A stretch of 64,000 nt of DNA from Oopsacas minuta (Eukaryota > Animalia > Porifera), in assembly GCA_024704765.1 (NCBI GenBank), contig JAKMXF010000066.1:627854-691853 (forward strand), given 5' to 3'. Under the pieces are notes generated by a model that had not been told where the DNA came from, ran no database searches, and saw only the letters and a program-made list of their open reading frames with translations. A program made the translations under genes and the position numbers. Below, piece after piece: positions 1,367 to 61,663 of the stretch (the stretch's first letter is position 1; every line of letters begins with the position of its first letter).

Positions 1367-17480
<16,114 letters not shown>

Positions 17481-30378: not shown

Positions 30379-33300
30379 TTATTTTTTGTGAGCATATTGC
30401 AGTAAATATCGTTCACAGATCTCTTTAATAGCGCTGTCTCCTTTCTCAATAGCGAGTTGTCGAATTCTCTTCACTTCTTCTATCATGTTCGTTTTGACTG
30501 CAGCTAGATACGCGTTACGTAACCGTCCGAATTGAATGTTAAGTTCAACCTAGAGGGAATTTAGAAATTAGAAATTATAAATTTAAATATTTCGTTGTTA
30601 AACTTACTTTACTCTTGTCACAGATTAGAAGACTAACAACCATCTCAGGGTCCTAGATCACAAAAAGATAAAGTGTATATTTTGTCGTTTTCGTAATACG
30701 AAATACAGTGGAACCCTCGTTAATACGATTACCAACAAAGGCCAAAATTTGCTTTGTCCAGAGTTGGTATTTACGAGGTTCCATTGTAGTCAACTACTGT
30801 ACAATAGGTTTTTATTCAGGAAATACGGTCAATGAATATAACTCACCAATATGCCAACAGGTACTTCTCTTATAGCATTAATAACAACTTGATCTCTCTC
30901 TATATCAGTTACTTTATAACATTTTGAATAGTAGCGTATAGTCTCTTTCAAATCATCAGATCGCTTAGCTAGCAGTAAGCTAGTTATAGCCTCTGAAAAT
31001 ACTTCAGAAGCAACCAAGCGAAATGTCTAAATGGTAAATATACGAAAATAATTTGAGTAATAGGATAACTTAGAAATGCAAATTAGAATAGCAAAACTCT
31101 CAGTACTCATTCACCGGTAATCTGAACCCAAATTTGATGGATAGTTCACTCTCAAAATAACTCGAATTGATTACAATCCACAACATTTTCCAATAATTAC
31201 CCATAATATGCGATAGATATCAAATTTCTTGTAAGAAATATTACTACTATAAAAACCAAACTCACAAATACTACATTACTCTAACCAGTGCTAGTTATCA
31301 ACTAGTCATATATCTATCAATTGTATTCACAGTATAGATTTCAAGGACATAGTACACAATGGAAGAACCTGGGAAAATAATCAATATGGTGTTAAAGAAA
31401 GGTAACTTCGAAAAGAAAATATTCATAGTAACGCTAGCCTTTGCATTTGGGTTAGTATCATTATGGTTTTTTGGATATCTCCATGGGAGCATTGCATTTG
31501 ACCAATTACAAATCCACATAGATAACGTGCCTATAAACGTAGATACTCCCATCCAATTTGATATGGAAGATTGTCCTTACGCTTTTCCTTACATTTCCAA
31601 ACTCTATATCAACTTTAACGTGGATGAACATTCAAATACTGATATTTCCATCTCATACTATAAGTATAAAGATGAGTATGAAGGGAAATACATGAATAGG
31701 ATTAATAATTGTTTCGCTACAGTAGGTCAATCGTGCTCATTAGAAGTTCCAAGGTATGAAGAAGGCAAGTACTTGGTGGTTAGAGCTGATGAAGTCCAAA
31801 AAGAGGAAAAAGAAATAAAAGGAAAGTTCTTTTGGAGATGCGAGAAACAGTACAACGTAATCTTTACAATAATTGGATACATGCTAACTAGTCTGATATT
31901 ATTTGTATTTCCTCTCGGACTATTTTTGATTGACATCTAATTGACAGTAATGTTAAGAATTTTCTCTAAGATAATTATTAAAGTTAAACTCAATACTATA
32001 TTTTATATGCTGATTCGGCTCAATATATCCCAAATAATTTCTATAGGAATACTGATAATGGCAAAAACTGAATAGCATAAAATCATAAGGCAGCAAACCG
32101 CATACATAATTACAATAAGTATACAGATATACATATTTGTAAGAAATTTTCCTTACAAATACATTGCTTGTATGAAGTTTTTCCTAAAATAGATGGCATT
32201 AAAATGGCTGAAAATCACACCCAGAATAACCGAGGCTAAAATGAATATTGAGAGGAAAATTCTAACAATTACAGTCTACACAATTCTAATTATTTGTATT
32301 GTAATCGCAATTCCGACTGTAATAATATTAATTCTAGCCAAGGTAGGGGAAGAGCCCGCGACAGTGTTTCACTCTACAGTAGATGAGGGCGGGAGCACTC
32401 GTTTAGAATTCACAACAGAGAATTGTCCAAAGATTTCATATTTCTACTCAAACCCCTCTGAACTGAATTTGTACCTCAAAATATTCCCAGATACTCTCTC
32501 AAAAGCTGGGATTACTCTATCTTTCTACACATCACGTTCCTCAAATGATTCTAACATATATTTCGGTCGTTTAGCGCTATGCTATGCTTCTCCAGGATCC
32601 CAATGTTCATTATTAATCCCCAAACACGTATTATTCTATCCGATAGTAACAGCAGATTCAAATCTTGATGGAGACATAGATACAATAATATTTCGATGGG
32701 AATGTTTATACACAATGAATGATCCTCTCATCGTTACTACAGTACTATTCACACTGTGTTTATACGTAATATTTACAATATTAACGTTCTTATACTTCAG
32801 AAAAAGAATTATTGGAACTATTACGAATTGTTTTGAGAATATTCATGCGTTTATAAGAGCAGCGCAAAATGAAGAAAAGGTGCTGAAAACTCCTACTGAG
32901 TTAACTATTGATGAAATGTTCAGAACAGATACTACTATTAGTTAGGAAATATAAGTGATAATAATAGCTATGAGATTCCCAATTGTGATTTATAATAGCT
33001 GGACTATACGTATTAGTAATACAGGTAACTCCCATTATATCGAAGCTCAACGGACAGTGGTAAGAACTTCGATCTAACCGATGACATATATGTTACTTTG
33101 ATGGTTTAGGAACATATTTGTATTATTTCAGACTCGATATAAGCGGGTATTTTGATATTACGGGAGTTGATCGTATTACAATTTACAAATATCTCAAACA
33201 CTTCAAAAAATAAATCTCACCTTTATTACTTGAAGCATCAATTCAATACCAAGGCTGACTGTATTTCCTGCTACGATTATCTAAAGAAGTAAACTCTATC

Positions 33301-36300
33301 ATTTCAATATTTACCATACAAAGATTAAACATACTTCAGCAGCTAGCTTTGTTTTGAGTGCCGGAGACCCGAATAGTGTCGGGGTTTGAGTTAAAGGCTG
33401 TTTGCCAAGCTTTAAGTTAGAAGCAAATAGATTTTTGTTCTGACATAGATGGAAGAATTGTGTTACTTCAATTTGTAGTTTTATATTTTCTAGGTAAGCG
33501 TTGAGGTCTGCTATCGGTTTAGATTCTTGTTTAACCTAAAAGCCACAAAATAAGATATTTCTCTCTGAATGAAATCACAGAAAAGTTGAAATACACTTCC
33601 ATATTTGGGCATAAATATCGTTATTTAATTAGGACACAGAATAATTTGAATTTTTAGAAATCTACTCGAATAGAGCTGTAAATAGCAAAAGTATAATTAA
33701 GGACTTCACTTAGGCGTTATACAAACAAAGAAGCCCTGAGGTCATTTGGTTGGCTCCATTGTGTCATTGAACTTTGTCCGGTGGGTATTCGCTAGTGCAT
33801 GAAAATAGAAGCCAATTATACGTAAAGTAACATTAGATAACGCATAACTACAGACTCATTGCTGAAGTATAAAACCCAAGAAAAATGGAAAGACTTAAAA
33901 CAAGCGCTAATAAATAGAGATGGGAAGTGGATGTGAAAATTGCTATAGGAAAAATAGAAGTTGTATTCTATGTTTCTGCATGTTTCTATTTATTCTTTCA
34001 TCGATTGCAATCGCTGTCGTTTTAATTTCTGGTATCTTAATGATAATACAGGTATTTCAACTGATAGGCGATGCACGAGTTGATGACAGCCAAATTACAA
34101 GAGCTGAATTAATCGATAACTTTAGTGATCACTGGCTAGTCATGACTTCATCGTTTTTCCTACTTATAATTATCTCCATTTTGTATCTTTGCATGCATTT
34201 ATCATGTATTTGTCACTTGATAAGGAGGAATAAACAGTACGATAAACAAAAGAAACAGAATGAGAAGGGGACTGAATCAAGTCCCTTACTTAAGAAGAAA
34301 GGAAAATTAGTTGTTGGAAAGGATAGAGGAGTTATTGACATGGATCATGCAAGAGAAGAGTTTTACTAGATATTTGTTTTGTTGATTATTTATTTATCTT
34401 TATAATATATTTGGAGGTTTAATTGTAGAAGAGATAATTCTTTGTCTTCATTCCTGTTTTTCTAGCATAGATAGCCTTGAGGCATATTAAAACTGTAAGC
34501 AATGCAATCGCCGATTCAAATACTTTATACAAATCTCTTACTTCATTTAATAAACACCAAAATATATTTGGCTATTTATTCGTATTTCACATTTGTAGAA
34601 AGAGGTTTAATGAGTCATTACATGCAAATACAATAGAATAGGTATGCTTAGCATTATTATTATACACATAATAATAGACACATATTTATAATATCAGTAT
34701 ATACCACTAAAACCCTCTCTTCTTTCGCAATAAACGAGACAAATGTCTGAGTGAGCGTAAGGCTACACAACACAAACAGAGCAGACCACCAGAGGTAGCA
34801 AGGAATACAAAAATAGAACCAGGAAATATAAAAAATATAAAAAACATAGTACAAGCACAAATAGAAAGTAAAACAATTACTACACAAATAACGAAAGACG
34901 ATGAAGCTACTGTTGAGATAGCGATACAGCCACAAATACAAATTACACTAACAACGCTCACAAAAACAAAGAAAGACACCGAAGTTACTCCTGCAGTTGA
35001 GATACAAGCACAAAGACATAATACACTAATAACTACACCAATAATTACAAAAACAACCAAGGATGATTGAATTGATAGCGCGATACTTACACCTGCTATC
35101 GTCCAAGTTATCGGATCATTTAAGAAGAAATAAAATGAGATTACTCTGGTCATATTATAGTGTCTATATTAGCACACAGTAAGCCTACAATGCTATTATC
35201 TCAGCATCGGATTACAAGAAATACAAAGCTTTAATAATAATAGACAAATATGATAAGGAAGAAAACAATAACAAGAACTGATAGCAATTATACACAAAGT
35301 TAAACGGATACTACGACGTAGTTCATTATTACTGCTATTAGTTATCATCTGGAGCACCTAATAATGTAGGGTATTCATGTGGGAATAGAGTATTATAAGC
35401 AGGCGGATGTGACATTGTGCTGGCTACATCATTTCGTATGGAAGTACGACTTTCCTGGCTCGGTAAGTTTGGCATATGCAAATCTGAATAGTAGCGTTTC
35501 GTTATGAATGGAAATTTGACACATAACTTCACACAAGAATAGAGGAGAAAAGCAAATATGAAAAGGAGGATGAAAAGGAGGATAAGGATAATAAAAGCAA
35601 AACTAGAAAGCAATAGAAATAGAAGAGTAGCAAAAAGCGAAGATGTAACAACTACTCCTGAGATCGCAATTATTGGAAGTACGAATATGCTGAAACATAT
35701 GTAAGAGCATTTGTTGTAGGACCTCATTAATAACCTAGCAAAATTATAGAAATTAATTAGTTTCATACTTTATATCGCCAAAAGGTACATACACAAAGCC
35801 TACAATCATATTAAGCATCAAATTACACCTGACAATAATATTGAACAACAAGTCATGCATAGAGCGGTAATCTTATTAAAAGAATAAGTGAGACAATAAT
35901 AATAATAACAAAACTTCCAAATCCTCACAATGTATTTGATAATAATATTCTATTTATAAAAATACACATTAAAACACGATAATAATGGCATATACAAACA
36001 CTATACTACCACTTCACTAGCTGGTACTTGATTATAAGTGGGTATTATCCTAGCTCTATCTCCAGCAGATATTGCGTTATAGGAAGGAGGAGGAGTACGT
36101 GTTGGAAATGAACCAATACCTTGTTCATGATGTGCTTGGGGGTTAATAAATGCATGCTCATCCTCATCATATGCCTGTTGTTGATGTTGGTCTTCTTCTT
36201 GTTCTTTCTTTCTCCATAAAGGTTGACGGCATTGTAAATATAAACAACAAACAAAAAATTGACAAGAACACACTGATAATATTAGTAGGAAACAAGTAGC

Positions 36301-39300
36301 AATTCCAGATAGAACAAAGTTACCATTTGATTGATCTGAGAACAAAAGTATTGCAAGTACAAATCCAGTTATTATGATAAATGGAAGAAGAGTGGTTGAC
36401 AAGCAGAGACAAGAATAGACCAAAAGTTTCTCACATATAAGGCAACTCTTTCCCATCTTAGAATAATATTAAGAATATATGGCAGTATAATATGAGATAA
36501 TTCATATATATCAAGGATTGGGCCTACCGATACAGTATCTAGGATATAATTCTAAGAAAGTATTAAATTACAATACTGAAGAAAAGATACAGATTCAAGA
36601 AGAGTATTAACCAAATAAATTCAGTAGAAATGCAGAAGAACTTTGCTAGTACTTACAGATTATAATTCTCATTCAGAACACGTATTAATCTCAATAATGT
36701 AAATTTCCTGCAAATAACAATACTATGAAATAATTAATCAACTGGAAAATAAAGATTCTCTCTCGTTGCCAGGTTCAACACGTGTTGACGTATACATAGG
36801 TGGAGGAGTAGGTCGATTAGCTAGCACACCAGAATTATAGAATCTCCTCTCAATGTTTCTGTCATTATAAGCACAATTAGTCTCATTTTCTATTCTAATA
36901 TTCTGCCTTCTATTCTCCCAACGTTCCTCTCTTAGTTTGTACATAATAGTACAGGAATAGCATATACAACCGAGTATAGATACAATTAGCAACGTAGTAG
37001 AACATATTAAATAAATCTCATCAAATGGAAGAGTCCCTGGTGTCGCGATGGATTCTCTATGAACATGATCTATTACCCCAAGACATGACACTATTATGCC
37101 AGCTATGAAACAGAAAGGTAACAGAAATGCTGTACAGCAAATAAACGATTTGATTATCGTTTCGTCTGTAGAATAGTTCTTCATAATAAGAAATACAAAA
37201 TTATTCAAAATATTATCTTTGTAGAGATGTCCATAATATGCTGATCGGGTATTATAAGTATATTATAGAGGTAATTCCATATAAGGAGGGAAATTTGAAA
37301 TAATGACTCATACAGCGTAAGAGAATATGCAGCTGATATTATTACACGACTTGTATAAAGTATAAACAAAGAGACTGTTCAATAGGGGTGTGTGGAGCCA
37401 ATGGTAGTCCATGGACGACACCAGGGGGTCCACAGAATGTGTCAAAATTGGTTGGGAACCGCTGTTTAGTGTGGTCGTGTACTTCAACTGAGAGTGGATA
37501 TTAAATTGATAACACTTCATAAGGTAATATAATATCTGATAGAACAAATAATAGAATATTATGCGTAAAGTTAACTATAAAGAAGACGATTCACATTGAT
37601 AAATGTAAAAAAATGAGGAAATTAATTTTCGCGTTTATAACAATAGCCGCAGTTATGTGGTTTGGGTTATACTTTTCATACTTACTTGTAGATGTACTTC
37701 TTCGTATTTCTGACCTTGGAACAACTTATACGTTATATTACAATGCTTCTTGTGACGTAAAGAATAGCTCAGTACCTTGCATTAACGATAGAAATGTAAC
37801 TCATGAATCGTTTTGTGATGGTATTATGCATTCATTCGTGCTAAATACTGTGAGTACTACAGTAGAAGGAGCGATTACGTGTACATGGACAGCTGTATCA
37901 TTTTTCTTTATTACGTGTACGGTCCCAATTATTGACAGAATAACTCAAGTGAATATAGTAAATAAGAAACTGAGTCTACAAGTTATAAATCTACAAAGAC
38001 AGTTATCTGAGAGAGCAAGGGTTATCGTTAGGAGAGCTGACAATGCTCTACCCCCCTATACAGAGGAAGCAGATGAAAGAGGGAGGCTGTTAACAGAGGA
38101 TCGATTGCCAAGATACGATACAGTCGATAATCCTGCAAACTAAGTGAAAGAGTCTATCAAACAAAAGAGTTTATATATCCTATTTTGTAAAAAGTATATT
38201 TCCTTGTTGTAAGTACTCAATCTTGGATTAAAATGTTAATTAAAAGTATTTTTAAGTACAGTGTGTGCAGAGGTAGTCCACGGACGACAGCAGGGGGTCC
38301 ACAGAATGTGTTATATTGCTATAATGGGACCACAGGTCAAAAGTGTTGGGAACCGCTGAGAGAGAGGGATTATCAAATTTTCATGTATTCCTTCATACGA
38401 TAAATTTCTAACTAGCATATATTGCTAATTTGAATGTATTTAAACCATGGATAATAGAGAAGAAATACAGAGGAGTATTGTATTACTAATTAGGCAATAT
38501 TGTACAAATATATAAATGAGGAATAAGCTACAAACTATATTCTCTAATTGTGTAATTAATAACCTTAAAGAATGGTTCATATAACAATTCGTGGTAAAAT
38601 TCATATATTCTATTGCATATTTATTCCCTTCACCTTAGCAACCTGGGTGCTATTAATAATAGCTATCCCATGGTCTATAATACAGCTTAATTTCCAAAAT
38701 TCATGCAATGATGCACATTGTCAACCGATAAAATATGGAGCTATTTTAAATATATTATTATCAGTGGTTATCATCCTATGTTGCTTGACAACGTTCCCGT
38801 TCATATGGTATTTAGTTCGTATCGTTACAAGCAATACAATCACAACACTACGAGAGAGTGACAACAGCACAGAGAGGGGAAATAGACCTTCATTCAGTAT
38901 CAGAGATAGTTTACTGCCTTCCTATAGGACCGCTACTGCAATAAGAAATGATAATATAGAGATTAGCAGTGGAAGAAGTGTACCTGATGAGTCATTAGTA
39001 GCAGATGGTTATAGTATGCAGAATTGAAGTAATGATTCAAAAACTTTGTTATAATTATTCACTGAGAGTTGAGGCTATTTTAATGAAATATTTTAAGATA
39101 TGAATTGTGGGTAAATTCTATAGTGGTCATATTGTTCAATCGATTGATCAAACTTTAACTGCCAAAAAGGTTTGAAAATATACACATTAGAAGAATTACC
39201 CATACACCAATTATGTCAATAGGACAACTAGATTTATGATGACAGCGCGGCACAGACGTCGTACACGTCTTCCATCTCCCTACACGTAGAAACTGTATTA

Positions 39301-42300
39301 AATAGATGAAAGTGAATTGCTATACATTTGCTGTACTAAGCAAATCCACAATACTTAGTTCACTATTTAAATGGATAGGTTATTAATATGTAACTACACA
39401 ATCACAAAATCTTATCAAATTACACGTAAGATCAGAAATATAAGAGCTTTAGGCATAAAATGCATTACTACAAGACTTGACTAATAATTCATTTAACTCT
39501 AGCATAAATATTGTATTCATATACTCCAATACTTAGGAACAGTTTTTGCAAATCATCTTTGAAATACAGTGGATGCCATACATGTTCTTATAACTGGTAT
39601 TAAATATACAGGAATATTTGGGAACCGTTTTCCAGAGGATGGTGCTTATATCCGGCATCCACTGTACATTGGGTATTTAACACTTTCAGAAGTGTTAAGT
39701 CCCAGTACATAGAGCTAATTGGAAGCTCCACTTAATTAAGGAAAACTGTTAGGATGAAAAGTTAACTAAAAACTTCCCATAAGCCATCATAATTAACATA
39801 TTTACAAAAGATTATTTTGTAATTAGCTATAAATATGTGTTCGTCTTCACTCCGTATAGTATCATTTGCCTGTGCATTCGGAGTGCTAACAATCCTTCTA
39901 ACTCTCTCAATAATATCAGGACTATATTTATTCGTCCTATCGTGGTCAGAATTCTGCCAATCTGTTCCTACAACATGTGAAGAATGTGAAACTTTATCAA
40001 CTAACTGTGATTATCTAATCGCATCTACATCCTTACTATCAGCCCAATCAGCATTAATAATCCTATGTTTCTATACGATAATATGCTTCTATGTGACTAT
40101 CAAACGAAACACAACTGATATATTGGAACCAGAACCAAGTGTTGAACTACCAACACCTTTCATAATGGCAGACACATCCAGGAACCCTGTATGCACACCA
40201 CATATCCTTCCTGAATATTCAGAGGCTCTTAGTGATAGAGAATGTTTGATCAGACCAAGACAACCTCCAAACTACGCTGACATTAACTAATATTGAATTA
40301 TCTGTGTGTGTAATCATACATTTTATTCAATTGTTTGTTTTATTAATCAAAAATACTTTTACTTAACTGTAGGCTGTAATTCTATTGGTCAATACACTTG
40401 ATTAAGTATAACTATACTAATTTATCATATGATTAATCATATTATCACCTTTTGAGGATATTTCAAAATTGTCCTCGAGATTAGCTTCCACCTGTAAGTC
40501 AGAGGTAAACAGGGCTGTAATAGTCGATTCTATCACTTGCGAAGGTCTAACACGATTATTTACTTAAGATTTGAAATTCTTACTAAAATAGAGTTTTAGT
40601 AGAATATTATAGTTCCAATAATCAAATGAAATTCATTTTAGGGAAATCAAGCAATTTTGAGATATTAAATCCTAGAAATACTAAAATACAAAAATACAAA
40701 AAGTTAACAAATAGCCCTAAACTAATGACTAGTTATTAATAATACAAGGAAACCTCTTCTGAGAGAGTAGATTATTTTCATTTGATTTAGGATCTCTTCC
40801 AACGACAGTCCCGTAATCTGGGAGATCATTTAATAGACGCTCTGTGTCCGGCGCGGATGGGGAGGTAATTGGGTCAACATGTGTTGGGGGGTCTCTTGGG
40901 ATGTATGGGCGTTGTATTTCCGGTTTAGGTATAACTCTATTGATCCTCTGTATCTCAACATGTAGTCCGGTATTCGTAGCTCGTAGATCTTCTATATCCT
41001 CCTTCAGCCTAGCTATAGCCCGATTCAACTTCCTTTTTGTACTTCGGTTCGTTTTCAAACACATGAAAAACATGAAAGTTGAAAAAACAACGAGAATGAG
41101 TGCAAATAAATTATTCAAAATAGCTGTTGATGGTAAGAAGCAATTATCCAAACCGAATTCTGTAGAGAAATGCTTGTAATTCAAACAAGTCTGTTTAATA
41201 TCACTAAAATTGATATTAGTTAGTACGAGTAGCGTGGGAGAAGATACAGATACGAAGATTAAAGATATAATCAGCGGAATAGACAATAAGATAAATAGGA
41301 TAATCTCGAATTTGATTTTACACATCTTGGGGTAAGAATAAGATTTGCTAAATAAAATATACAAACACTACAGTTTAGGCATATATAAGTATTTGAAATA
41401 TGAGATATGGGAGATTTGATATGCGTATTTCTAACAGGTATAATTAATTAATACATGGATATATATGGGACTTTTCCAGTTCACGATATTGTCATTTCAA
41501 ATATACAACCACGTATATTCTGCAACAAGACACATAACTAACTATCAAATACAGTTATATGTAAGTTTATTAAACGACTATGCTATATTACTCATGAAGA
41601 ATACACTAATGATAGATAGATGAAGTAATAACTAATTATTGGTGTTAATTAGCTAAATATTAAATATCTAAGAAATATCCCAATAAACTTATTTCACACA
41701 TAAAATACTAACTGCTTTAGGGATGTGGGTACTTATAGTATAAGAGTTGGTTCACCTGATTGGGCTGAGGTTCCTCTCCAATAACAGCCCCGTAGTTGGG
41801 AAGATGGTCGATTAAAGAGTCAGTTTCTTCACCAGTTTCTAGATCTTCTCTAGCACATGGAAGGTACTCTAATTCAGTCATTTGTTGACTTGTATTTTGC
41901 ATGTCATTTCGTATTGGATTAGTGTTTGGCTGTCCTCTCACTCTCTGAGACTCAACATGCAATGCCCCTATTTCATCATGTAACTCAGTTATTTCAAACG
42001 TGAGTAACCTCACTTCCTTTCCCCATTTCTTCTTAGTATCCGCGTAAGCGTTTCGAAATAGTAAAATGATTACAACCGAAGTAATTACAAGACAAATGCT
42101 CAACAAATTATGGAAAATCCTGAGCAATGGTAATATGCATTGATTCAAATCATCATCAGTCGTATGATTAAGATAATGAATACATATATCTTTTAAACCA
42201 TCGACATTAGTATTAGTTAATAGAAGCAATAAAACTGATGATATGGCTATGTAGAGGACGGATACAGTGAATGGTATAGCGAATATCACAATACACCATC

Positions 42301-45300
42301 TTACTTGGCAACAAGGCATTTTTATTATTGGGGATACGATCTATAGCAATCTAGTTGCTTATAAATACAGTTGTATGTTTGTTCGTTTACTAATCAGCTA
42401 CGCTATATGAGTCATAGTGTGAATAGGCTGAAAAGATTCGTAATTTATAGATGAGGTAATGACTAAATTGTGGCATTAGATTATTCTCTGATATAATTAA
42501 CAGGGGCTGACTAGAGCTTGGGGTGTCAGGGGTAATTGTTATATACAACCATAAACTGTAAGTAGTAAGTATAATTTAATAGGAATTAATCACAATACAT
42601 TCAAAACCTTAAAATTACGTATTTTAAACATAGAATCTAGCAATCACAGAATATATTATATTACTCATATTTGTAATATTTCAGGAGTTTGTTATTCAAG
42701 CTGAGTGTTATAGAGAAATTGCTAACAAATAAAAAAATAAATAAAGTTTAATGCTACATATGATTGCAGTGATTATATTGTGTCAGGATTTTCATCAATA
42801 ATATCCATATATGAAGGGGGACGAGATGTTACAGAGATGCCGGCTGTACCTTCAAAATTATAAGACGCGAGATTGCGAGAAGCTCGAGCACTATCCATAG
42901 TTCGTGGCCGCGAATGTCTACGCCTTATAGCTATTTGTTTCTTCAAAGTTCCTATTTTAAACTCCTTTTGTTGTACTGATATTATTAGTCCGCCAGATAA
43001 GGCAATGAAAAAAATCAAGCCAATAGTACTGATACCTAATACAATAGTAACGATGTACTTCCAAGGACTTCCTTCATCACAACTGATACCGGACCACACA
43101 GCGAAGAGATACACCAACTCCGTGGGGACAGAGCAAATAGTCCATATGACGAGAAGAGTAAAACAAGTGAGAGAGGTAGCGAAGCAACAACTGTGGTCAC
43201 AGTTTGGCATAATAACGATATTAAGGACCTTCAGCTAGACTTATCAGTTATTTCAGCTGGAGTATATCATCAAAAATGGTTTACAAAACGAGATAGAAAT
43301 TTTGGTTGAGTTATAATACCACAAATCCGTATGACAACAATTATGGTAATTAACTGGAGGAACATTGTGCAGTAGACTCCCGTAATATCAAACACGAATA
43401 TATCTAAATAACCACTAATATCGAAGTAAGTATTACGGTCCCTTGAGTTGTGATATAACAGGAGTTGGGTACACTTGAGATTATATTAATTTGATAATTT
43501 AGATAATTGCATTAATTATTATCAGCAAATTGAGCATAGGAAGGTGGATTTGAAAATGTATGATTTCTGCCTTCAACATACGGTGTATAACCAGGTAGGC
43601 TTGAGTGAAATCCCCGCAATCCGCTTAGCTGTAACCTGCTCTCCTCCAAAGATGAACTTGTGAAAGTGCCATCCTCATTTTGCCTCCAAGAATCGCTATA
43701 CCTAGAATTTACTGCGTGTAATTCATTCCATATGACAATAGTAAAGCAGCAACAAGTAGCTGCTAAACACACCAGCATCATGCCAAGTATAAACTGCATG
43801 AAGAGTACAATTAAGACAACTGCCAAACTCTCTCGGACTGTTCCAATTTTCGCATCTTTCTCATAGCCAGAAATTGAGAATAATATCGTCACGACCAATG
43901 AAGAAACTTCAATAAGCAACAGGCAAAAGCATAGATATATTGTACAGCATGAAATACAGTATTTACGCGATTTTGTCATTGTGTTTTCCCAAGCTAAAAT
44001 GTTTATAATTGTTTCGTACGAATTGTAATTTATACCGTAAATATTGCTGAGCCTACTGTAATTTCTAATTGAAATAGATATCAGTAGATTACCCAGCGTA
44101 AGCAATGAAAATCCTTGTAATATTATGTCATATGAAAGTGTCTGAAATAAGTGATTTGGATTTGTAAATATTTTCATGAAGATATTATTTCACAGGAAAA
44201 TTTGGTTGTTTGCATTTTAAGGAAATATGCAATATGCCATTATGGATTGCTGGTTTGGTTCAGGTGTTTTATGATGATTGTGCAAACACAGGAAGTAAAA
44301 GAATGGCAATTTGTGATCATTATTAAGCAACCAAAAATGTTATTCGTATTTACTTTAGAGGAAGAAATCGCAAAAAATATTTACGGTATACATATTTATA
44401 AATATGAATTGGTCATCAACAACTAAAAGATCTTCAACAAAAAGTGAAATTCTCCAATTGAGTCTCAGACCATATTTCCTAGGATTATATTTCATCTTCT
44501 TATGCTCAATAATTCTCATACAAATTATTATATTCTTAATAAAAGGCCAAACTTCTTCTGAAGTGAATTGTTACTTGGATATAAGTCTACTTGTCCTATT
44601 GATATTGGGGAATATCCCAATTGCATTTGTAAACCTAATTATCCTGAAGAAACTGAGAGGGGCGAATGCTACGATGAAACTTGATAAAAGAAGCTTATAC
44701 CAAACATCTGTGTATGCTCATACTCGAGTTTTGGAGTATAGAACTTCTTATCTCTAGATTATTCTATTTGTTCATATTTTTATTCTATTATTAATACATT
44801 ACACTTCTTTTTAACATATTTTCTAAGGACCGGGCTAGATATTATTAGAACAGTAAATCCCAGTTATAAGAAACCCTTGGGAGTAGGGATACATGTTCTT
44901 AAAACCAGCATAAAGTATAGAGGAATATATGAGAACCGTTTTCAGAAGAGGGTGCTTATATCCAGCATGTTCTTATAACAGGTATCCACTGTACTGCATA
45001 GCAGTACATACTAAGGTATAGCTGATGGCGAAGAAAATGAAACAAAAGAGTGTCAAATAATCTGCCATTGAAAATCATCAAACTTGAAACTCGCAAATAT
45101 TCTATTCAAATTGTTACAATCGATAAGAACTAGATAGCGTATATATATATATATAGGAGTATATAGGTTAAATAACTCCTAAAAGTTAAAGTTATCTGAA
45201 AATGCGCAAAGATATATTTTTCGCATTATTACTCTCACTCTATACAGTGATAGCAGAGATATCTCTAGACCTTGATGAGTACACATTACAAGATAAACAA

Positions 45301-48300
45301 GTAGGTCAGGGAGCTGGATTATTACTAAATTCAACTCCTTTTATAACAGGATTGATAATTTTGATTATTATAGTTTGTGTTATAATGTGTGTAGGAGTTG
45401 TGATTGGATGTTGTTGTAGTAAAATGGCTTATGATACTGAGAGAGAAGTTAAGAAAATACATTTGTGACTGTTTGATTGAAATGCTATTAAATGATATTA
45501 AATATTTTCTATTTATAAACTGGCTATTCGTACGGACTAGTGCTTATAGAAATTGAATCCATACGCACGACACCTATTAGGTTAAATTTTGGGCAAAATT
45601 AAGAGTTAGAAAATATTGACACCTCCCTAAAAAGGGGAGTAATGAATTGACCTATCAGATTTGGGGGTATACTCAGGACATGCAGGCTGATATTCTATTG
45701 GTTTAATTGAATATACAAGTTACATAGTGGGAATTGATTGAATACAAGGGCTATGCCAGCAGACAGGTTAAATGAATTGTTGCTAAATAACTTTCAAAAG
45801 AGATAGGTTATTCCAAGTCAGGAAATGTGCTAAATAAAACACAAAATAGTTGTATTATGAAGTTCTACTAAAACTGATAAATATGTTGGCAGAGCAAATA
45901 TTATTAATTAAATCATAGTAAATTCAACTATTGTGTTCTTGGAAAATATAATTATTCTCCATTCGATTACTCACAAATATTTATATGCACAATCTATCTC
46001 CCCAAAATACCAAGAAAATTACTCTTTGAAAGGTAATCTAAATACAGCAAATACAAGTATAAATATGGTGAAAAATTCCATTATCATCAACAGAATGACA
46101 TTACCAACTGTAGTTACAATAATAGTCATAACAGCCTCATTATACATAGCATATTACGTCATATATGTATCTGTACACACAGACAACTTATCTACTAACT
46201 CTTCAATTCACGTTATCCCTGATGGATACGTTATTAAAGATATTATAGTGCTTATAGTCAAAGGCTTAAGCGTGCTATGTGTTGGAGGGATAGTTTGTTG
46301 TATTATTTCTATTGCATGTGTTTTATATGATGGAAAATGTTAAATTAATATTATAGCTCAAATCAGCGGTCCCAACCTGGGTCCATTGACCTCTTGGTGG
46401 TCCAGGGAGGACAGCAGAGGATCCACACTCCACAGGATATGTTAAATTTGTGATGTTAATTAATAGCTCAAATATACTTTAATAATATCTACATAAGAAT
46501 ACACAAATATTAGTTAGGCTTATACACACGTGTAGCTTCCCTCCCCACGGCATGAGAGCCGTCGGTAGCTATCACTCTTTCCCTCTCAAGTACTTGAACA
46601 CGACCACTTTGTGTCAACCCGGCAACTCTAGTGATATGCTTATTAACCAATACCCCGTCAATAATAACTTGCTCTACTTCTTCGCCAACTATCAGAGGCT
46701 GTGCAGCTGGTTGATTACGTCTAACTACTTGATTGTTATAACTTCTTTGTTGTCGAGGTAGTCGTTCTCGTTGTTGTTGTTCTCCCTCACATAAACAACA
46801 ACAACACCCGTAGTACACACAACATACAATTAGACCCATTTTAAAGAAAACTGAGTCATTCAGACAATATATACATACATCAGTCCCATAGCCTATTAAA
46901 GTGTAACATTATATTGGGTATTATAGGAATAATACGTAATTACGTATATACAGAAATATGCTTAATCTACAGATAGGAATTCAAATATTTGAATTAATCT
47001 GGAAAAGTAGGATTGACTGAGAATTGTTAAGCTCCACCTTGAGTAATTTAAAAATCTCCGTTACAACATGCTTGGAATTTGGTATGATGTTAAATGTTCA
47101 ATAAATATTAAAATAATAATTCCTTACATGCTATGGGGTGATACAAATATACTATTAATACACACCAACTAGTTAGCTATCACTCTGTACTTCTACAAGT
47201 AACTAAACATTCCACTATTCGTCATTACTTATTAATCGAGCGATCATGCATGACAGGTTGTGCCACTTCCTCAGCAACTATCGTAGGATATGCAGGTGGT
47301 GGTGGTGTATCACATCTAAATACTGAGTTATCATGACCTCTCTGTTGTGGTTGAGATCTATGTTCTTCTTCCTTTTGAAGTCTTCGCCGTTCAAGTTGTT
47401 GTTCAATTTGATATTGCTGCTGCTGCTGCTGTAACCGTTGAATTCGTTCTCGTTCAAGTTGAAGTTGTTGTTCCAGCTCAAGTTGCTGCTGCTGCTGCAG
47501 TAGTAGTTGTTGAATTCGTTGCTGTTCCATTTGTAGTTGTTGTTCTATAATTTGTTCCTGTTGTTGTCTAATTTGACCTTGAAGTTGTACCATTTGTATT
47601 TGTTGTTCTACATGATGATCTTCTTGTTGTTGTCGTTGCTGTTGTTGAGTCTGTTGAATTTGTCGAATTTGTCGTTTGCGTTTTTTATTTTGTCGCTCTT
47701 CATCTGTCTCACAACATAAACAACAACAGCAAAGATAGTAAAGACAACACAATATACACATTTTAAAATGAAAACTGAGATATTCACATAATATATAGTA
47801 TGTATTGCCTAATTTCAGTGTAATCAATAGTGAGAGTTATAGGAATGTATAATGTGGAATAGATATGTTTGTTAATGTATTACTTACTTCTAATTCATTA
47901 CACACACAAACAAACCAAATACAAATCACAAACAAACAATTAAACTCAAATCAAGAAAACGGTGGAGTACAACTATCCTGTACAAACGGCTTACTGGGAT
48001 TATTACCTCCGAAAGCTGAATAGTGTCTGGTGACTTTAACTCCATCAACATATCCTGTCTCAGTCTTCTGTTCCTTAAACAAAGGAGTACGGTCTGTCGA
48101 CGGGTTTATTGTCCGAGGAGAATTTCTATTCCGGAATGAATGATAGGAAACCTGTGGAGTTACGAATTTAGCACCTTTGTGATTACCAAAATCTTCATCA
48201 CAGCAAGTTATACAACAACAAACAATACTAGGGATTAGGAATGTTATGAAAATACAGCTGGAGCATCCGAGGATTACTGCAGAAATCAGGAACTGAAAAT

Positions 48301-51300
48301 TAAAGAAGCGAAGAGTCCAATCTACTGTTGTGGTAACCGTAACAGATGAATTCAATGTAACATATGCATATGAACTAAGGTCCCATACCAGGACAATGCA
48401 GGTCCCGTTCGGTCCGACCGAGCAATTCATTAGCTCAGTTGGATTCGTTTTATTGCTATCATTTATGGTTATCTGTATTCCTGTCTCGTTAGGGGCAGTG
48501 GCTTGTAAAAACAGTAGTAACGGTTTAGTCTTGAAAATATTCGTGAAATAATGCGAGGAATTGATAGGGATAGGACTGACTGTAGTATTCGGAGGGAAGG
48601 AAATATCGTTGGAAGTTAAATTAGCGAGCAATTCTTTATCATGGGTAATGAAGAATATTACACAACTCGGAATGAGCACTAGTAACGCCAGGATCATAAA
48701 ACATACATTACAGAAGGCACAAATAAAACTAAAAGTCCCCATTTTAAAACGATAATCTGAGATCTTCAAGCTAGCTATATATCCGAGCCAGTGCCTACTA
48801 CAACAAGATTATTAAAGCTTAAAGTAATAGCAGACTAATTATTGTGTTTATTCAGCAGTTTACTTGGAAACATTTCTCAATGCATTGGCAGTAATATAAT
48901 ATCTGCTATCACATATATGAGTCAGAGAGCTACAAGGCCAATTGAAAGTGACGCCAATGATCTATGTGGAGACAATGTGGCCAAACATATGACCACAGGA
49001 ATGAGGAACCATGAGCATAAAGATTTCAACAATCTGTATAAAATATCATTAAGGTAACTACAATTATAATGACATACAGATACAGATAAGGACAATCTAC
49101 TTATAGAGTCAGATTTAGTTTAGCCTTGATTTCCTTCTCAGACTTATCCTGTCCAGCTTTCTTCTCTGCTAGTTTATTCTCAAAAACTTGAAAATTTGTG
49201 AGTTCTGATTTCTTCCCCTCAGCTATAATAGTATGTGAGGGTGATGTTGTGTGAACTGAATTGGTGGGGGAAGCAGTTGTTTTAGGGTTCTCCACGTCCT
49301 GATTAGGAAGTGGGACTAAGAAAAACTGGCAACTCATTATGCAAGTCATACAAAACGAAAGAAGACAGAAACCAATAGGAAATCCTATTAAAGTAACTGG
49401 AATAATATCGGTAGCAGTAGTATAATTGCAATTATTGAAAAGACAAGCGTTATGATGTGACAAACCCCGCAACAGCAAACTGCCCTCCCACGAGATCTGA
49501 TAAACTTTACTTCTAATTCTCCCATTTGAGCTCTGTAGTCTTTTGAATTTTGGGTTGAGTATTTGATTTGATTAATTTTCACAGAATTACTTCATATTTA
49601 TAATAGTAAAGCAGGACCTTACGACTATGTTAGAGACTCACCGTGGGAAGCAAACATTATCATTTTATGAATTCATTTGACTTCATGACGACACAGAGAA
49701 AGAAAATATCACGCAAGGAATGTTTTAGAAATCTCATTAAATCAGTGTGTAACACTATCTCAATTCTAAAATGCCTTCAATGTATTTACCTACTTAGCAT
49801 ATTGAAAGTGAACTGATAACAGAATTGGATTATATGCAATTATTTACTGTCAGATGTGATATTTTGAAGCACAAGCGACTGCGATAATTACAGTGGAATC
49901 TCGTTAATACGAATTTCCGGATAAGACGACCAAAAAATGTGGACGTTTCCTCCCAAAATGGATATAAAGTCTGTACTAAAGTGTCACAATGATACAGTTC
50001 GACAAAACCAAAGTTGACACAATTCCCAATTAGCCCAAGTAAGGACCAACACATATCACCACTGCATATAGCCAGAACAATAGTATACATTCTATTGCCA
50101 GTCTTCTACAGTATGTCTGCTAATAGCTAACAAGAAATAACCAGCCTACAAAAAGTACGAGCTGTTCGCCAACATGTTGTTGAATACCTAGCTATTCTCC
50201 ACGTATGTACTAGATTAGTATGTAAATTGGAATAAGCATTAAACATTAGGTAACACAGGTACGAATCCACATAACAATAACTATATTCACTCAATCACGA
50301 ATAAGTCAAGCACGCGAGTGAACTTTTGGTATAAAAATGGAATTTAGAAGTTTGTCATAAATGAAAAATCGCAATATTTTGGTGATCACTCTATTGGTGA
50401 TTGTATTTATTCTGATTTCTCTATTGGTGTCTACTGGTTTGTGTGTATTAATTCTCTCATTTGTTAATTATGGACAACTTTACAAAAAAGATATAATTAT
50501 ATCTACAAACCAAACAATCGATCTTGAAATAAATTCAGTAGATTGTCCGGTGAAATACGGCGGGGGTCAGAATCTTCTGAATCTTACAATCTCAAATCCA
50601 ACACCTTCAAGGCTGGATGTATATGTAGAAATCAAAAGCAAGGAAACAAACTTCAATAAAAGCTGTATGGCGCATCCTGGAGATAGCTGTAGTGTTAAAT
50701 TGGACGAGAGTAACGCATTTCGAGTTTCATTACAGACAAATACTTCACAAATATATTCTACAGAAACTATTGCCTTAGTCTTGTCTTGTGAAGTTAATAG
50801 TAATGCACTAGCAATCACTGGAGGTATTATTCTAAGTGTTGGGATTATTTCGGGAATAGTGTTGTTATTGTTTGTTATTGTTTGTTTAATTAATTGGAAT
50901 TGTTTTAGTGACAGCTCCAATGCATTATACGGATAAATATATTTACAAATATCTGTTGTATTATATCCATATTATAAATTCTAATTACAGTATTCATTGA
51001 AACAAAAGTATCCAGATTGGTTACGTCATCATTACCATGGCGATAATAGCAAAGAATAAATTTAATTTCTCAGTCATCATTCAACAAATCTCAAAATCTT
51101 TGAATAAATATTAAAGGCGTAAAAGTATAGCAAATAATATCTACACATATCTAATAGAGGCATTGTGGGGTGTACTCGGTTGTGTAGTGGGTAATTCTTT
51201 GAAAGGAACATTGTCAATGTAATCCAAGGGAATAGGAGAGTTTGCTTGAGGGAACGAATCAGGACTGCGTTTTTGCAAACATTTCAAAACCCAAATAGAG

Positions 51301-61219: not shown

Positions 61220-61663
61220 ATGGGATTTATGACTGCAATTATTCTATATTTTGCCTTGCAAAGTGTTTACTGTTACAATGATGATGATGATGATCTTGAG
61301 CTTGTACAGAGAATATCTAGTTATGTGGGTTTAGCAATTCTCATGTTTGTTGTTATTTACATTTGTGGTTGTATTGTCGCGGTTTTGTATTTCGCATGGA
61401 AAGGTAGGTGTCGATGGGAAGAAGAGGAGGAGGAAGCAGCAGCTGACATAACGTCAGTTGTTGATATACGACCCCCGAATTATAATGATATTTTTAAAGG
61501 ACGGCAACTCAAGTGTTCGACTGATTCATCGGAACTCCCGGCATATGACGCGGTTGTTATGGGAAATTATCCATTTCCGGTCAATTCTAGATCCTTAAGA
61601 CGAGCCTCCAGAGCATCTGTGTCATCCAATCAGAATAGAAGCTCAGTTGTAATGGAAGTATGA
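61220..61663 (+). CDS. Type-I small membrane protein with PPNYNDI and LPAYDAV tail
   Basis: 147 aa: signal peptide, about 15-aa acidic ectodomain, TM, poly-E, two PY motifs. TATATAA lies 48 bp upstream. Confidence 0.8.
   Translation: MGFMTAIILYFALQSVYCYNDDDDDLELVQRISSYVGLAILMFVVIYICGCIVAVLYFAWKGRCRWEEEEEEAAADITSVVDIRPPNYNDIFKGRQLKCSTDSSELPAYDAVVMGNYPFPVNSRSLRRASRASVSSNQNRSSVVMEV

What the first reader, a model, noticed from the sequence alone, without database searches (positions are those of the whole stretch)
35338..44177. Shared tail code: ten consecutive genes carry (L/P)PxY, mostly fused to YxxPhi and often paired with an acidic dileucine (candidate NEDD4-adaptor / IFITM-like system)
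Seen: the 2-TM proteins are hardly alignable, yet all ten genes from 35338 to 44177 have PY motifs, as do 47225 and 61220. The motifs are PPAYNTL, PPSYNAI, PPMY, LPPY+LPRYDTV, LPSY, LPEY+PPNYADI, LPDYGTV, LPNYGAV, PPSYMDI, LPGY+PPSYAQF, PPAYPTI and PPNYNDI+LPAYDAV. 11 of these 16 motifs continue as YxxPhi. [DE]xxxL[LI] motifs occur in six proteins (ESSPLL, EYPTLL, ERGRLL, DRECLI, DTERLL, ETDSLI), and in four they sit 2-4 residues before the PY motif. Juxtamembrane Cys clusters are common. Knowledge: (L/P)PxY binds WW domains of NEDD4-family HECT ligases, while YxxPhi and [DE]xxxL[LI] bind AP adaptor complexes. The overlapping PPxYxxPhi design occurs in ENaC and IFITM3 (PPNYEML). Yeast has tandem-family PY membrane adaptors of Rsp5. 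Inference: this is a diversified set of palmitoylated endolysosomal proteins that bring NEDD4 ligases to membrane cargo or act as IFITM-like restriction factors. The host gene spastizin is also an endolysosomal, AP-5-associated factor.
Basis: partly seen in the sequence, partly recalled or inferred. Interest (0 to 1): 0.92.

Follow-up and report, generated by a model that had tools for sequence, protein, structure and literature searches.

The report
Glass-sponge PY-tail membrane protein family
A tandem cluster of small two-pass membrane protein genes in the glass sponge Oopsacas minuta has diverged almost beyond alignment, yet keeps two short tail signals (a PY motif and an acidic dileucine) across at least five genome assemblies, which points to a new family of adaptors for NEDD4-type ubiquitin ligases.

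Summary
All ten ORFs from 35338 to 44177 carry [LP]PxY in the C-terminal tail, as do 47225 and 61220 (joint shuffle probability for the ten: 5e-14).

The window is Oopsacas minuta (Hexactinellida). The ten genes, plus 33920, form one family of 2-TM hairpin proteins with N-in/C-in topology and a disordered cytosolic tail. An RNA-like run covers the ORFs at 10-100 times the intergenic depth.

A profile search of 1.84 billion proteins found relatives only in four other ENA assemblies, whose organisms are not stated. Gene order there is the same. There are 64 non-identical members in all.

At orthologous PY positions, L/P is kept in 50/52 cases, P in 50/52 and Y in 52/52, while the x position varies freely. 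An ExxxL[LI] motif is equally conserved and usually sits exactly 4 residues before the distal PY. Motif columns are 71% identical against 34% for the rest of the tail.

The hydrophobic Y+3 residue is kept in only 18/27 cases, so the "fused YxxPhi" idea is only partly supported.

No CD225/IFITM, NDFIP or LAPTM match appeared among the listed Pfam hits. The only recurrent Pfam hit is sub-threshold Commissureless (14 of 64 members, best 25.1 bits against a cutoff of 27).

Best reading: a new lineage-restricted family in the known class of PY-motif membrane adaptors or cargo of NEDD4-family ligases. WW-domain binding was not tested.

The scan also noted this cluster in other first-stage notes (s1-211784, s1-211978).

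The parts
33920..34369 (+). Family member without a PY motif (149 aa, 2 TM). The tail has ESSPLL and ends in EEFY.
   Evidence: Joins the family HMM. The orthologue P0009 is 59% identical and keeps ERTPLV and a terminal DFY.
35338..35766 (-). Family member, 142 aa. The tail has PPAYNTL followed by EYPTLL.
   Evidence: Joins the family only with the multi-species HMM (E 5.9e-12 in a database of 119 ORFs).
36001..36456 (-). Family member, 151 aa, with a Cys-rich N-terminus and TM2. The tail has PPSYNAI and a distal IPTYNQ.
   Evidence: Weak Comm PF15957 hit, E 0.018.
36738..37184 (-). Family member, 148 aa from the ATG start. The tail has PPPMY.
   Evidence: Weak Comm hit, E 0.003. Orthologues have PPTY, PPVY, PPIY or PPLY.
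37613..38143 (+). Family member, 176 aa. It has a long loop with Cys residues and N-glycosylation sequons, and a coiled segment after TM2. The tail module is LPPYTEE - ERGRLL - 4 aa - LPRYDTV.
   Evidence: The module is conserved in 8 relatives: LPxYxE..., E[RQ][GE]xLL, LPxYQ...
38572..39027 (+). Family member, 151 aa. The tail has LPSYRTA and a conserved C-terminal DGYSM.
   Evidence: RNA-like contigs span 38556-39073 at depth about 250-320, against 15 in the next spacer.
39835..40290 (+). Family member, 151 aa, with a 4-Cys loop. The tail module is LPEYSEAL - DRECLI - RPRQ - PPNYADI.
   Evidence: Orthologues are 59-68% identical with the module nearly invariant. RNA-like depth is about 1600.
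40729..41325 (-). Family member, 198 aa, with a coiled coil after TM2. The tail has DTERLL-ND-LPDYGTV.
   Evidence: Paralogue of 41717, E 2e-22. Orthologue P0007 is 48% identical. RNA-like depth is about 1000-1600. Of 9 allelic SNPs, 5 are synonymous and none breaks a motif.
41717..42319 (-). Family member, 200 aa. The tail has ETDSLI-DH-LPNYGAV.
   Evidence: AF2 model: helices 3-36 and 59-128, with the tail 137-199 at low pLDDT. The PY motif at 173-176 lies in a block with mean pLDDT 56. RNA-like depth is about 190.
42773..43210 (-). Family member, 145 aa. The tail has a degenerate LASY followed by PPSYMDI.
   Evidence: Orthologues have LPSY plus PPAY[LM]D[VI].
43512..43982 (-). Family member, about 156 aa from Met66 of the 221-aa ORF. 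TM2 is rich in Cys (CCC). The tail has LPGYTPY and PPSYAQF.
   Evidence: Orthologues start at the equivalent Met. The RNA-like contig ends at 43978 and depth is 0 beyond 44113. Motifs are conserved.
47225..47761 (-). PY protein outside the 2-TM family. It has an N-terminal poly-Cys hydrophobic anchor, a Gln-rich coiled coil and PPPPAYPTI.
   Evidence: Related to 46510 (E 5.6e-5) and more weakly to 47951 (E 0.012).
61220..61663 (+). PY protein outside the cluster. It is a single-pass protein with a signal-peptide-like N-terminus and an acidic ectodomain. The tail has PPNYNDI and LPAYDAV.
   Evidence: Its only Pfam hit is Comm PF15957, E 0.011, covering the TM segment and both PY motifs.

Best explanation
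This is a tandem, birth-and-death family of small (130-200 aa) two-pass membrane proteins. It was found only in Oopsacas minuta and a few other assemblies that share the same gene order, presumably other glass sponges.

Each protein forms a helical hairpin with both ends in the cytosol. The loop is short, variable and often carries Cys residues and glycosylation sites. The TM segments and N-terminus are rich in Cys. The C-terminal tail is disordered.

The only strongly conserved parts of the tail are short linear motifs: one or two PY motifs ([LP]PxY), and in about half the members an acidic dileucine (ExxxL[LI]), usually placed exactly 4 residues before the distal PY.

Inferred mechanism:
- The dileucine engages AP adaptor complexes and sends the protein into the endosome/lysosome system.
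- The PY motifs recruit the WW domains of a NEDD4-family HECT ubiquitin ligase.
- The protein is then itself sorted into multivesicular bodies, as for yeast Sna3 and LAPTM5. Alternatively it acts as a substrate adaptor that brings the ligase to membrane cargo recognised through the variable TM and loop part, as for Commissureless, NDFIP and Bsd2.

Shown: gene reality, family membership, topology prediction, motif enrichment and cross-species motif conservation. Inferred: binding to WW and AP proteins, localisation and cargo.
For: - Motifs are present and enriched.
- Topology: 57 Lys/Arg in the cytosolic flanks against 9 in the loop flanks. Cys pairs and NxS/T sequons lie in the longer loops.
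- The AF2 model shows a TM hairpin with TM2 running on into a long helix, and a low-confidence tail that contains the PY motif.
- Transcription: in run X4, depth follows the ORFs (190-1700, against 15-35 in the spacers) and adapters sit at contig ends. Runs X1-X3 are flat at about 100-150, as expected for DNA.
- A profile search of 1.84e9 proteins gives 24 hits, 22 of them small proteins of 132-200 aa including the window's own; the 21 fetched show the same architecture.
- These relatives lie in syntenic clusters in ERZ20067936, ERZ25072740, ERZ25072730 and ERZ25766962. One cluster sits next to the same NHL-TRIM gene as in the window.
- An iterative HMM unites all ten genes plus 33920 into one family of 64 non-identical members: 48 with PY, 30 with a dileucine, 21 with both. 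The dileucine-to-PY gap is 4 aa in 14 of 18 cases.
- Orthologous positions: L/P 50/52, P 50/52, Y 52/52, with the x position free. For the dileucine: acid 14/15, L 15/15, L/I/V/M 14/15.
- Motif columns are 0.71 identical against 0.34 for the rest of the tail, p 6e-12.
- The extended motif LPEYSEAL/LPPYSEA resembles Comm GLPSYDEAL and PRRG4 GLPSYEQAV, which bind Nedd4 (PMC5578492; PMC12101832).
- Yeast Sna3 is a small 2-TM protein whose C-terminal cytosolic PPAY binds Rsp5 and drives its sorting (PMC2171029).
- The O. minuta genome paper's supplement lists a gene (LOC99_15363) beside a best hit to NEDD4-like.
Against: - No binding, localisation or ubiquitination data exist.
- The NEDD4-family ligase of this species was not retrieved or examined here. 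The only evidence is a supplement table entry.
- PY motifs also bind WW domains of non-ligase proteins such as YAP, MAGI and WWOX.
- About a quarter of family members lack a canonical PY. Four of these have VPxY or IPxY instead.
- The organisms behind the ENA assemblies are not stated, so "glass sponges only" is an inference from synteny.
- The kind of run X4 is not on record; it is called RNA-like only from its depth pattern.
- Motif columns were defined on the O. minuta sequence, which biases the conservation comparison slightly.
Confidence: 0.6

Rival explanations
1. The PY motifs are ligands for WW domains of non-ligase proteins (Yorkie/YAP, MAGI, Kibra, WWOX, dystrophin-like). On this reading the family tethers signalling or scaffold proteins to membranes and does not recruit a ubiquitin ligase.
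For: PRRG4's PY motifs also bind MAGI proteins (PMC5578492). Group I WW domains of many proteins read the same [LP]PxY core (established knowledge). Nothing here tells one WW partner from another.
Against: The tightly linked acidic dileucine (gap of 4 aa in 14/18 cases) points to vesicular sorting. That is the setting in which NEDD4-family adaptors work. All characterised small membrane proteins with this design cited here (Comm, Sna3, Rcr1, LAPTM5, NDFIP) act with NEDD4/Rsp5.
Confidence: 0.12
2. The conserved Tyr serves mainly as a tyrosine-based sorting signal (YxxPhi for AP mu subunits) or as a phosphotyrosine signalling site. The preceding prolines would then be secondary.
For: 11 of the 16 O. 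minuta motifs have Phi at Y+3, p 4.5e-5. Some orthogroups keep it strictly: PPxY[EDM]D[IV], PPSY[AS]Q[FL], LPxYG[TAS][VL].
Against: Across orthologues, Phi is kept in only 18/27 cases, whereas L/P at -3 and P at -2 are each kept in 50/52. Family-wide, Y+3 is L/I/V/M/F in at most 28 of 65 motifs. The proximal motifs (LPxY[ST]E[AT]) have no Phi at +3. A separate dileucine already supplies an AP signal.
Confidence: 0.08
3. The proteins are IFITM-like antiviral or antimicrobial restriction factors.
For: Only a loose analogy: small proteins with two membrane segments, Cys near the membrane and a PPxY that overlaps YxxPhi, as in IFITM3.
Against: No CD225 hit appears in the ten-gene scan or among the 25 families listed for the 64 members. 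The PY is C-terminal and the loop is predicted to be extracytosolic, which is the opposite of the IFITM layout. No fold or feature match to IFITM was found.
Confidence: 0.03
4. The ORFs are chance reading frames or decayed copies inside an intron, and the motifs are compositional noise.
For: The genes are small, have no introns, match no annotated domain and sit inside another gene's intron.
Against: Orthologous ORFs stay intact in four other assemblies at 30-68% identity with the same gene order. RNA-like depth follows the ORFs. Motif shuffles give 5e-14. SNPs in 40729 are 5 synonymous to 4 non-synonymous, and the motifs are spared.
Confidence: 0.01

Closest known systems
Commissureless (Drosophila Comm, Pfam PF15957) and its proposed functional relatives PRRG1-4
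   Same: Short membrane proteins whose cytosolic region carries two PY motifs, including an extended LPxY[DS]E[AT] form (sponge LPEYSEAL and LPPYSEA against Comm GLPSYDEAL). There is little conservation outside the motifs, and the TM segment contains Cys. PF15957 is by far the commonest Pfam hit: 14 of 64 members, covering TM2 through the PY motifs.
   Different: All scores are below the Pfam cutoff (best 25.1 bits against 27). Comm is single-pass with a lumenal N-terminal domain, whereas these are 2-TM hairpins. Comm's two PY motifs begin 9 residues apart, with no dileucine reported between them. Homology cannot be told from convergence with the tools used here.
Yeast Sna3 (SNA/PMP3-like small proteins) and Rcr1/Rcr2
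   Same: Sna3 is a small protein with two TM domains and a C-terminal cytosolic PPAY that binds Rsp5 WW3. The motif is needed for its endosomal and multivesicular-body sorting (PMC2171029). This is the same overall architecture, and the same motif as in 35338 (PPAY).
   Different: No sequence relationship was detected. The SNA family is reported from fungi and plants. The sponge family adds a dileucine and often a second PY motif, and it is a large tandem array.
NDFIP1/2 and yeast Bsd2
   Same: Membrane adaptors with several PY motifs (PPxY and LPxY) that recruit and activate NEDD4-family ligases on endosomal and Golgi membranes and deliver cargo for degradation (PMC6913780, PMC12101832).
   Different: By established knowledge, NDFIP has three TM segments and its PY motifs are N-terminal. 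No NDFIP family appears among the listed Pfam hits.
Shisa-like STMC6 adaptors (Shisa, WBP1, VOPP1, CYYR1, TMEM92) and LAPTM4/5
   Same: Small membrane proteins with Pro-rich cytosolic tails bearing PY motifs, proposed or shown to act as NEDD4-family adaptors. [quoted passage not shown]
   Different: STMC6 proteins are single-pass with an N-terminal C*C*CC*CC domain, and LAPTMs have four TM segments. Only 3 of 64 members hit WBP-1, weakly (E 0.026 or worse), and no LAPTM (Mtp) hit is listed.
IFITM / CD225 dispanins
   Different: There is no CD225 match. The PY is at the opposite end of the protein, and the predicted loop topology is opposite.

Membership tests
Commissureless (Pfam PF15957) | Score at or above the Pfam gathering cutoff (27 bits) | tested here: not met
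   Window members score 15.7-18.2 bits. The best relative, L005:10001-10444, scores 25.1 bits, E 2.1e-5. 14 of 64 members hit at E 0.1 or better.
Commissureless (Pfam PF15957) | Single TM segment with a lumenal/extracellular N-terminal domain | tested here: not met
   Two hydrophobic segments with positive-inside flanks (57 against 9 Lys/Arg), and an AF2 hairpin. Only the unrelated 61220 is single-pass.
Commissureless (Pfam PF15957) | Two cytosolic PY motifs, including the extended LPSYDEAL type | tested here: met
   LPEYSEAL plus PPNYADI in 39835, with LPPYSE[AT] in its orthologues. LPPYTEE plus LPRYDTV in 37613. The motif definition comes from PMC5578492.
IFITM / CD225 | CD225 domain (PF04505) match | tested here: not met
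   No CD225 hit for the ten genes at E up to 1, and none among the 25 families listed for the 64 members.
IFITM / CD225 | N-terminal cytosolic PY motif, with a cytosolic loop between the membrane segments | tested here: not met
   All PY motifs lie 4-33 residues from the C-terminus. The loop has few Lys/Arg and carries Cys pairs and NxS/T sequons, so it is predicted to be extracytosolic.
NDFIP / Bsd2 | Three TM segments with N-terminal PY motifs, and a sequence match to the family | tested here: not met
   The proteins have two TM segments and C-terminal PY motifs. No NDFIP family appears in the Pfam lists.
Shisa-like STMC6 / WBP1 | N-terminal six-Cys domain (C*C*CC*CC) followed by a single TM segment | tested here: not met
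   The sequences show no such ectodomain. WBP-1 PF11669 gives only weak hits in 3 of 64 members, best E 0.026.
Functional class: PY-motif membrane adaptors/cargo of NEDD4-family ligases | [LP]PxY in a cytosolic, accessible region of a membrane protein | tested here: met
   By prediction only: positive-inside topology and a low-confidence AF2 tail.
Functional class: PY-motif membrane adaptors/cargo of NEDD4-family ligases | Motif under purifying selection across orthologues | tested here: met
   L/P 50/52, P 50/52, Y 52/52, with the x position free. Motif columns are 0.71 identical against 0.34 for the rest of the tail.
Functional class: PY-motif membrane adaptors/cargo of NEDD4-family ligases | Direct binding to WW domains of a NEDD4-family ligase, and ligase-dependent sorting or ubiquitination | not testable with these tools
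   This needs biochemistry. The only relevant evidence is a supplement entry that a NEDD4-like gene exists in O. minuta.

The most novel reading that the evidence does not exclude
The sub-threshold but recurrent Commissureless similarity may be real homology. Sponges would then carry true relatives of the Comm/PRRG type of PY adaptor, and this lineage would predate bilaterians and nervous systems. In glass sponges it would have expanded into a tandem array of a dozen or more adaptors, each steering a different membrane cargo to NEDD4-dependent degradation.
Probability: 0.15. Interest if true: 0.7.

Novelty: new member of a known kind. Interest (0 to 1): 0.48.

Why it matters
This is an unusually clean natural example of motif-only conservation. 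A dozen paralogues and their orthologues in several genomes have diverged to 12-68% identity, yet they keep [LP]PxY and ExxxL[LI] at fixed spacing. That gives a ready-made set of sequences for studying how short linear motifs are maintained.

It also supplies candidate NEDD4-family adaptors in an early-branching, syncytial animal in which membrane-protein turnover has hardly been studied.

If the weak Commissureless link turns out to be homology, it would move the origin of a textbook axon-guidance regulator to before the origin of neurons. If it does not, this remains an ordinary addition to a well-known functional class.

Tried and rejected
- Word-indexed homology searches with 41717 and 36001 found nothing beyond the query itself.
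- Leave-one-out HMMs built from the ten window genes alone did not recover 35338, 37613 or 39835. Family unity needed the orthologues.
- A Foldseek search of the AF2 model of 41717 against AlphaFold/Swiss-Prot gave only coiled-coil noise, with E above 0.1 and TM-score below 0.36.
- ESM Atlas feature searches gave only leads scoring 0.81 or below: tetraspanin, LAPTM5, TMEM252, TMEM51, TMEM174 and TMEM61 clusters. I did not pursue them.
- ITAM or ITIM readings of the paired tyrosines were rejected by inspection. The proximal motif has no Phi at +3, and the -2 position is Pro.
- A foreign or viral origin was considered and rejected. The GC content of the cluster (0.31-0.35) is within the range of its surroundings, and long single-ORF genes are normal in this window (CFAP65, NXF, SLC52).
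- Rfam and tRNA scans of 33000-52500 were empty.
- The last word-indexed search, with the 64-member profile, found only members in contigs of the same ENA type, with no named proteins and no other taxa.
- I could not fetch Comm, NDFIP or NEDD4 sequences with the tools, so no profile-profile comparison or WW-peptide modelling was done.
- Pei and Grishin 2012 (PMC3295595) is not held in the library.

Full report
**Source and setting.** An exact-protein look-up places the window on contig JAKMXF010000066.1 of GCA_024704765.1. The genome paper gives JAKMXF as the whole-genome project of the glass sponge Oopsacas minuta (PMC10280926).

The window is AT-rich, with GC of 0.30-0.40 throughout. It holds ordinary animal genes as long single ORFs: CFAP65, an SLC52 riboflavin transporter, eIF2B, a RING-NHL protein and NXF.

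A FYVE exon lies at 54403-54615(-). A weak match to the end of the ZFYVE26 TPR domain lies at 30379-30486(-). These two sit on either side of the small-gene cluster, which fits the earlier notes that the cluster is nested in a spastizin intron. I did not reconstruct that gene.

**The observation.** All ten consecutive ORFs between 35338 and 44177 have at least one [LP]PxY, and every motif lies in the tail after the last hydrophobic segment, 4-33 residues from the C-terminus. 47225 and 61220 have such motifs too.
- Shuffling each protein gives P(at least one motif) of 0.02-0.11, and 5e-14 jointly. Shared ancestry inflates this figure.
- Density is 16 motifs in 962 tail residues, against 2 in 5861 residues of the large unrelated ORFs.
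- Over six loci, density is 66 motifs in 9665 family residues, against 3 in 4451 residues of non-family TM ORFs.
- Y+3 is L/I/V/M/F in 11 of 16 motifs (background 0.21, p 4.5e-5). For other tail tyrosines the figure is 3 of 18.
- Acidic dileucines in the tails: 5 seen against 1.24 expected, p 0.006. Four end 2-4 residues before a PY motif.

Three gene starts need correcting.
- The 43512 gene most likely starts at Met66 (43982).
- 36738 ends at 37184 when ATG starts are used.
- 40729 ends at 41325 when ATG starts are used.

ESSPLL belongs to 33920, which has no PY motif.

**Are they genes?** One call of read laying on 38400-44300 covered four runs from a single sample. Three runs have flat depth of about 100-150 across genes and spacers, as genomic DNA would.

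The fourth run (X4) is different:
- Depth is 15-35 in the spacers.
- Depth is about 250-320 over 38572, about 1600 over 39835, about 1000-1600 over 40729, about 190 over 41717 and 42773, and about 370 over 43512.
- Depth is zero beyond 44113.
- Sequencing adapters sit at contig ends just outside the ORFs (38556, 39073, 43978).

The run's kind is not on record, so I call it RNA-like. On that reading, the six genes in the stretch are separately transcribed at different levels.

Allelic SNPs shared by X2-X4 number 9 within 40729. Five are synonymous. One changes an x position of the dileucine (R163L), and none touches the PY motif.

**Architecture.**
- Each protein has two hydrophobic segments.
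- Lys/Arg counts are 57 in the N-terminal and post-TM2 flanks, against 9 in the loop flanks. The longer loops carry Cys pairs and NxS/T sequons. The predicted topology is therefore N-in/C-in, with a cytosolic tail.
- The AF2 model of 41717 (mean pLDDT 69) shows helices 3-36 and 59-128, the second being TM2 running on into a long helix. Residues 137-199 are mostly at low confidence. The PY motif at 173-176 lies in a block with mean pLDDT 56.
- Cys clusters occur before TM1 and inside TM2. Palmitoylation of these is plausible but untested.

**One family, found in other genomes.** Within the window only some pairs are demonstrably related:
- 40729 and 41717 (2e-22)
- 36001 and 36738 (4e-7)
- 33920 and 43512 (1.5e-5)

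Leave-one-out HMMs fail for three members. In an 11-sequence alignment, the only invariant column is the Tyr of the distal PY motif.

That profile, searched with HMMER against 1.84 billion representative proteins, gave just 24 hits at E 1e-3 or better. Two are long proteins of 1131 and 1270 aa that I did not examine. The other 22 are small proteins of 132-200 aa, including the window's own; the 21 I fetched have the same layout and the same tail motifs.

The hits lie on large contigs of four ENA assemblies: ERZ20067936, ERZ25072740 (two contigs, probably haplotypes), ERZ25072730 and ERZ25766962. Their organisms are not given.

Each locus is again a tandem cluster. Gene order matches the window: 36738-like, then 37613-like, 38572-like, 39835-like, 42773-like, 43512-like, 44404-like, 45202-like and 46065-like.

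In one locus the cluster is flanked by the orthologue of the window's NHL-RING gene, which is 71.5% identical. Family orthologues are only 30-68% identical, so the family evolves faster than its neighbour.

An iterative HMM over all 119 ORFs of at least 90 aa in the six loci converges on 69 ORFs. These include all ten window genes and 33920. It does not recruit the neighbouring 31359/32193 family or 44404, 45202, the NHL gene and others.

**Motif conservation.** After removing identical copies and three borderline recruits, 64 members remain:
- 48 have a canonical PY motif in the tail.
- 30 have an acidic dileucine.
- 21 have both.
- 4 of the PY-less members have VPxY or IPxY.
- The dileucine ends exactly 4 residues before the next PY motif in 14 of 18 cases.

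At alignment columns where O. minuta has a PY motif, its relatives keep L/P in 50/52 cases, P in 50/52 and Y in 52/52. The x position varies freely (E/P/G, N/T/V/E, S/A, R/N/D). For the dileucine, the acid is kept in 14/15, the first Leu in 15/15 and L/I/V/M in 14/15, again with free x positions.

Motif columns are the most conserved part of the proteins. Identity is 0.71 for motif columns, 0.34 for the rest of the tail, 0.54-0.60 for the TM segments and 0.47 for the loop (Mann-Whitney p 6e-12). The motif columns were defined on the reference sequence, which is a small bias.

By contrast, the hydrophobic residue at Y+3 is kept in only 18 of 27 cases, and family-wide it is L/I/V/M/F in at most 28 of 65 motifs. 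So the [LP]Px part, not YxxPhi, is the constrained element.

**Comparison with known families.** No member reaches any Pfam cutoff.
- The one recurrent hit is Commissureless PF15957: 14 of 64 members, against 4 for the next family. Scores are 15.7-25.1 bits against a cutoff of 27. The match runs from TM2 to the PY motifs. The unrelated single-pass PY protein 61220 hits the same model.
- WBP-1 is hit weakly by 3 members.
- CD225, NDFIP and LAPTM do not appear in the ten-gene scan or among the 25 families listed for the 64 members.
- Fold and feature searches gave nothing usable.

The literature describes a class of short membrane proteins defined by PY motifs: Comm, PRRG1-4, Rcr1/2, Shisa-like and CYYR1. 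It reports "remarkably low" conservation outside the motifs and an extended form, GLPSYDEAL in Comm and GLPSYEQAV in PRRG4 (PMC5578492). The sponge LPEYSEAL and LPPYSE[AT] resemble that form.

Comm uses its PY motifs to reach late endosomes and lysosomes and to bring Nedd4 to its cargo Robo1 (PMC12101832). Yeast Sna3 is the closest match in architecture: a small 2-TM protein with a C-terminal cytosolic PPAY that binds Rsp5 and is needed for its sorting (PMC2171029).

**Interpretation.** The best-supported reading is a new, lineage-restricted family in the known class of PY-motif membrane adaptors or cargo of NEDD4-family ligases, with an added AP-type dileucine signal.
- Shown: the genes and their transcription (for six of them), family unity, predicted topology, motif enrichment, conservation across assemblies, and the fixed dileucine-PY spacing.
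- Inferred: WW and AP binding, endolysosomal residence, cargo selection through the variable loop and TM part, and palmitoylation.

The only evidence for a NEDD4-like gene in this species is an entry in the genome paper's supplement.

The IFITM-like restriction-factor idea fails its membership tests. The "fused YxxPhi" code is only partly conserved. The link to the host gene's biology is untested, and I think it is coincidental.

Whether the Comm similarity is homology or convergence is open. I could not obtain Comm sequences for a profile-profile test.

**Verdict.** It is a solid and tidy finding, but it is an addition to a well-known functional class and not a new kind of system. Interest is about 0.48.

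Noticed in passing
window 31359-31940(+), 32193-32945(+), 50361-50936(+), 51141-51923(-): A second small-gene family brackets the PY cluster. Each protein has an N-terminal TM segment, a lumenal domain of about 130 aa with conserved Cys, and a C-terminal TM segment. Pairwise E-values reach about 2e-10. Orthologues occur in L004, L005 and L006. There is no Pfam match and no PY motif.
   Followed up: partly
window 46510-46839(-), 47225-47761(-), 47951-48742(-): Three neighbouring genes share poly-Cys hydrophobic stretches (for example CCVYYGCCCCLC). 47225 adds a long Gln-rich coiled coil and PPPPAY. These may be palmitoyl-anchored proteins. 46510 has an orthologue in L002 at 45% identity.
   Followed up: partly
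window 61220-61663(+): A single-pass protein with a signal-peptide-like N-terminus, a run of Asp in a short ectodomain, and two PY motifs (PPNYNDI, LPAYDAV). Its only Pfam hit is Commissureless (E 0.011). It lies outside the cluster and is not part of the 2-TM family.
   Followed up: partly
window 39578-39658 and 44889-44968; also about 40370-40566: A short dispersed repeat of about 80 nt, with copies 84-87% alike. Its depth is 10-30 times that of the flanking sequence in the DNA-like runs (about 1800-3600 against about 100-150). Many loose ends and one joint (40443 to 43376) occur at it. It is probably a high-copy element.
   Followed up: partly
window 37403-37442, 38272-38311 (95% alike), 46396-46435 (65%): A GC-rich 40-mer in an AT-rich region flanks gene 37613-38143 on both sides. 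It gave no Rfam or tRNA match, and its function is unknown.
   Followed up: partly
window 40043-41415: A dense block of 22 SNPs is shared by runs X2-X4 against the reference (about 1.6% divergence). The next 2.4 kb has none listed. This may be a divergent haplotype block over 39835-40729.
   Followed up: partly
L003:5772-6278, L003:7898-8404, L002:2987-3430, L002:4977-5390; window 33920-34369: Some family members have lost the PY motif but keep the acidic dileucine (EREHLL, EREPLL, EQRRLL, EQERLL, ESSPLL). The two signals can therefore be uncoupled. Several have Pro just before LL, as in the LIMP-II and tyrosinase type signals (my own recollection).
   Followed up: no
window 38572-39027(+) and its orthologues: This orthogroup has a conserved C-terminal DES[LM]V[AP]DGYS[MV] motif in addition to LPSY. 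Its function is unknown.
   Followed up: no
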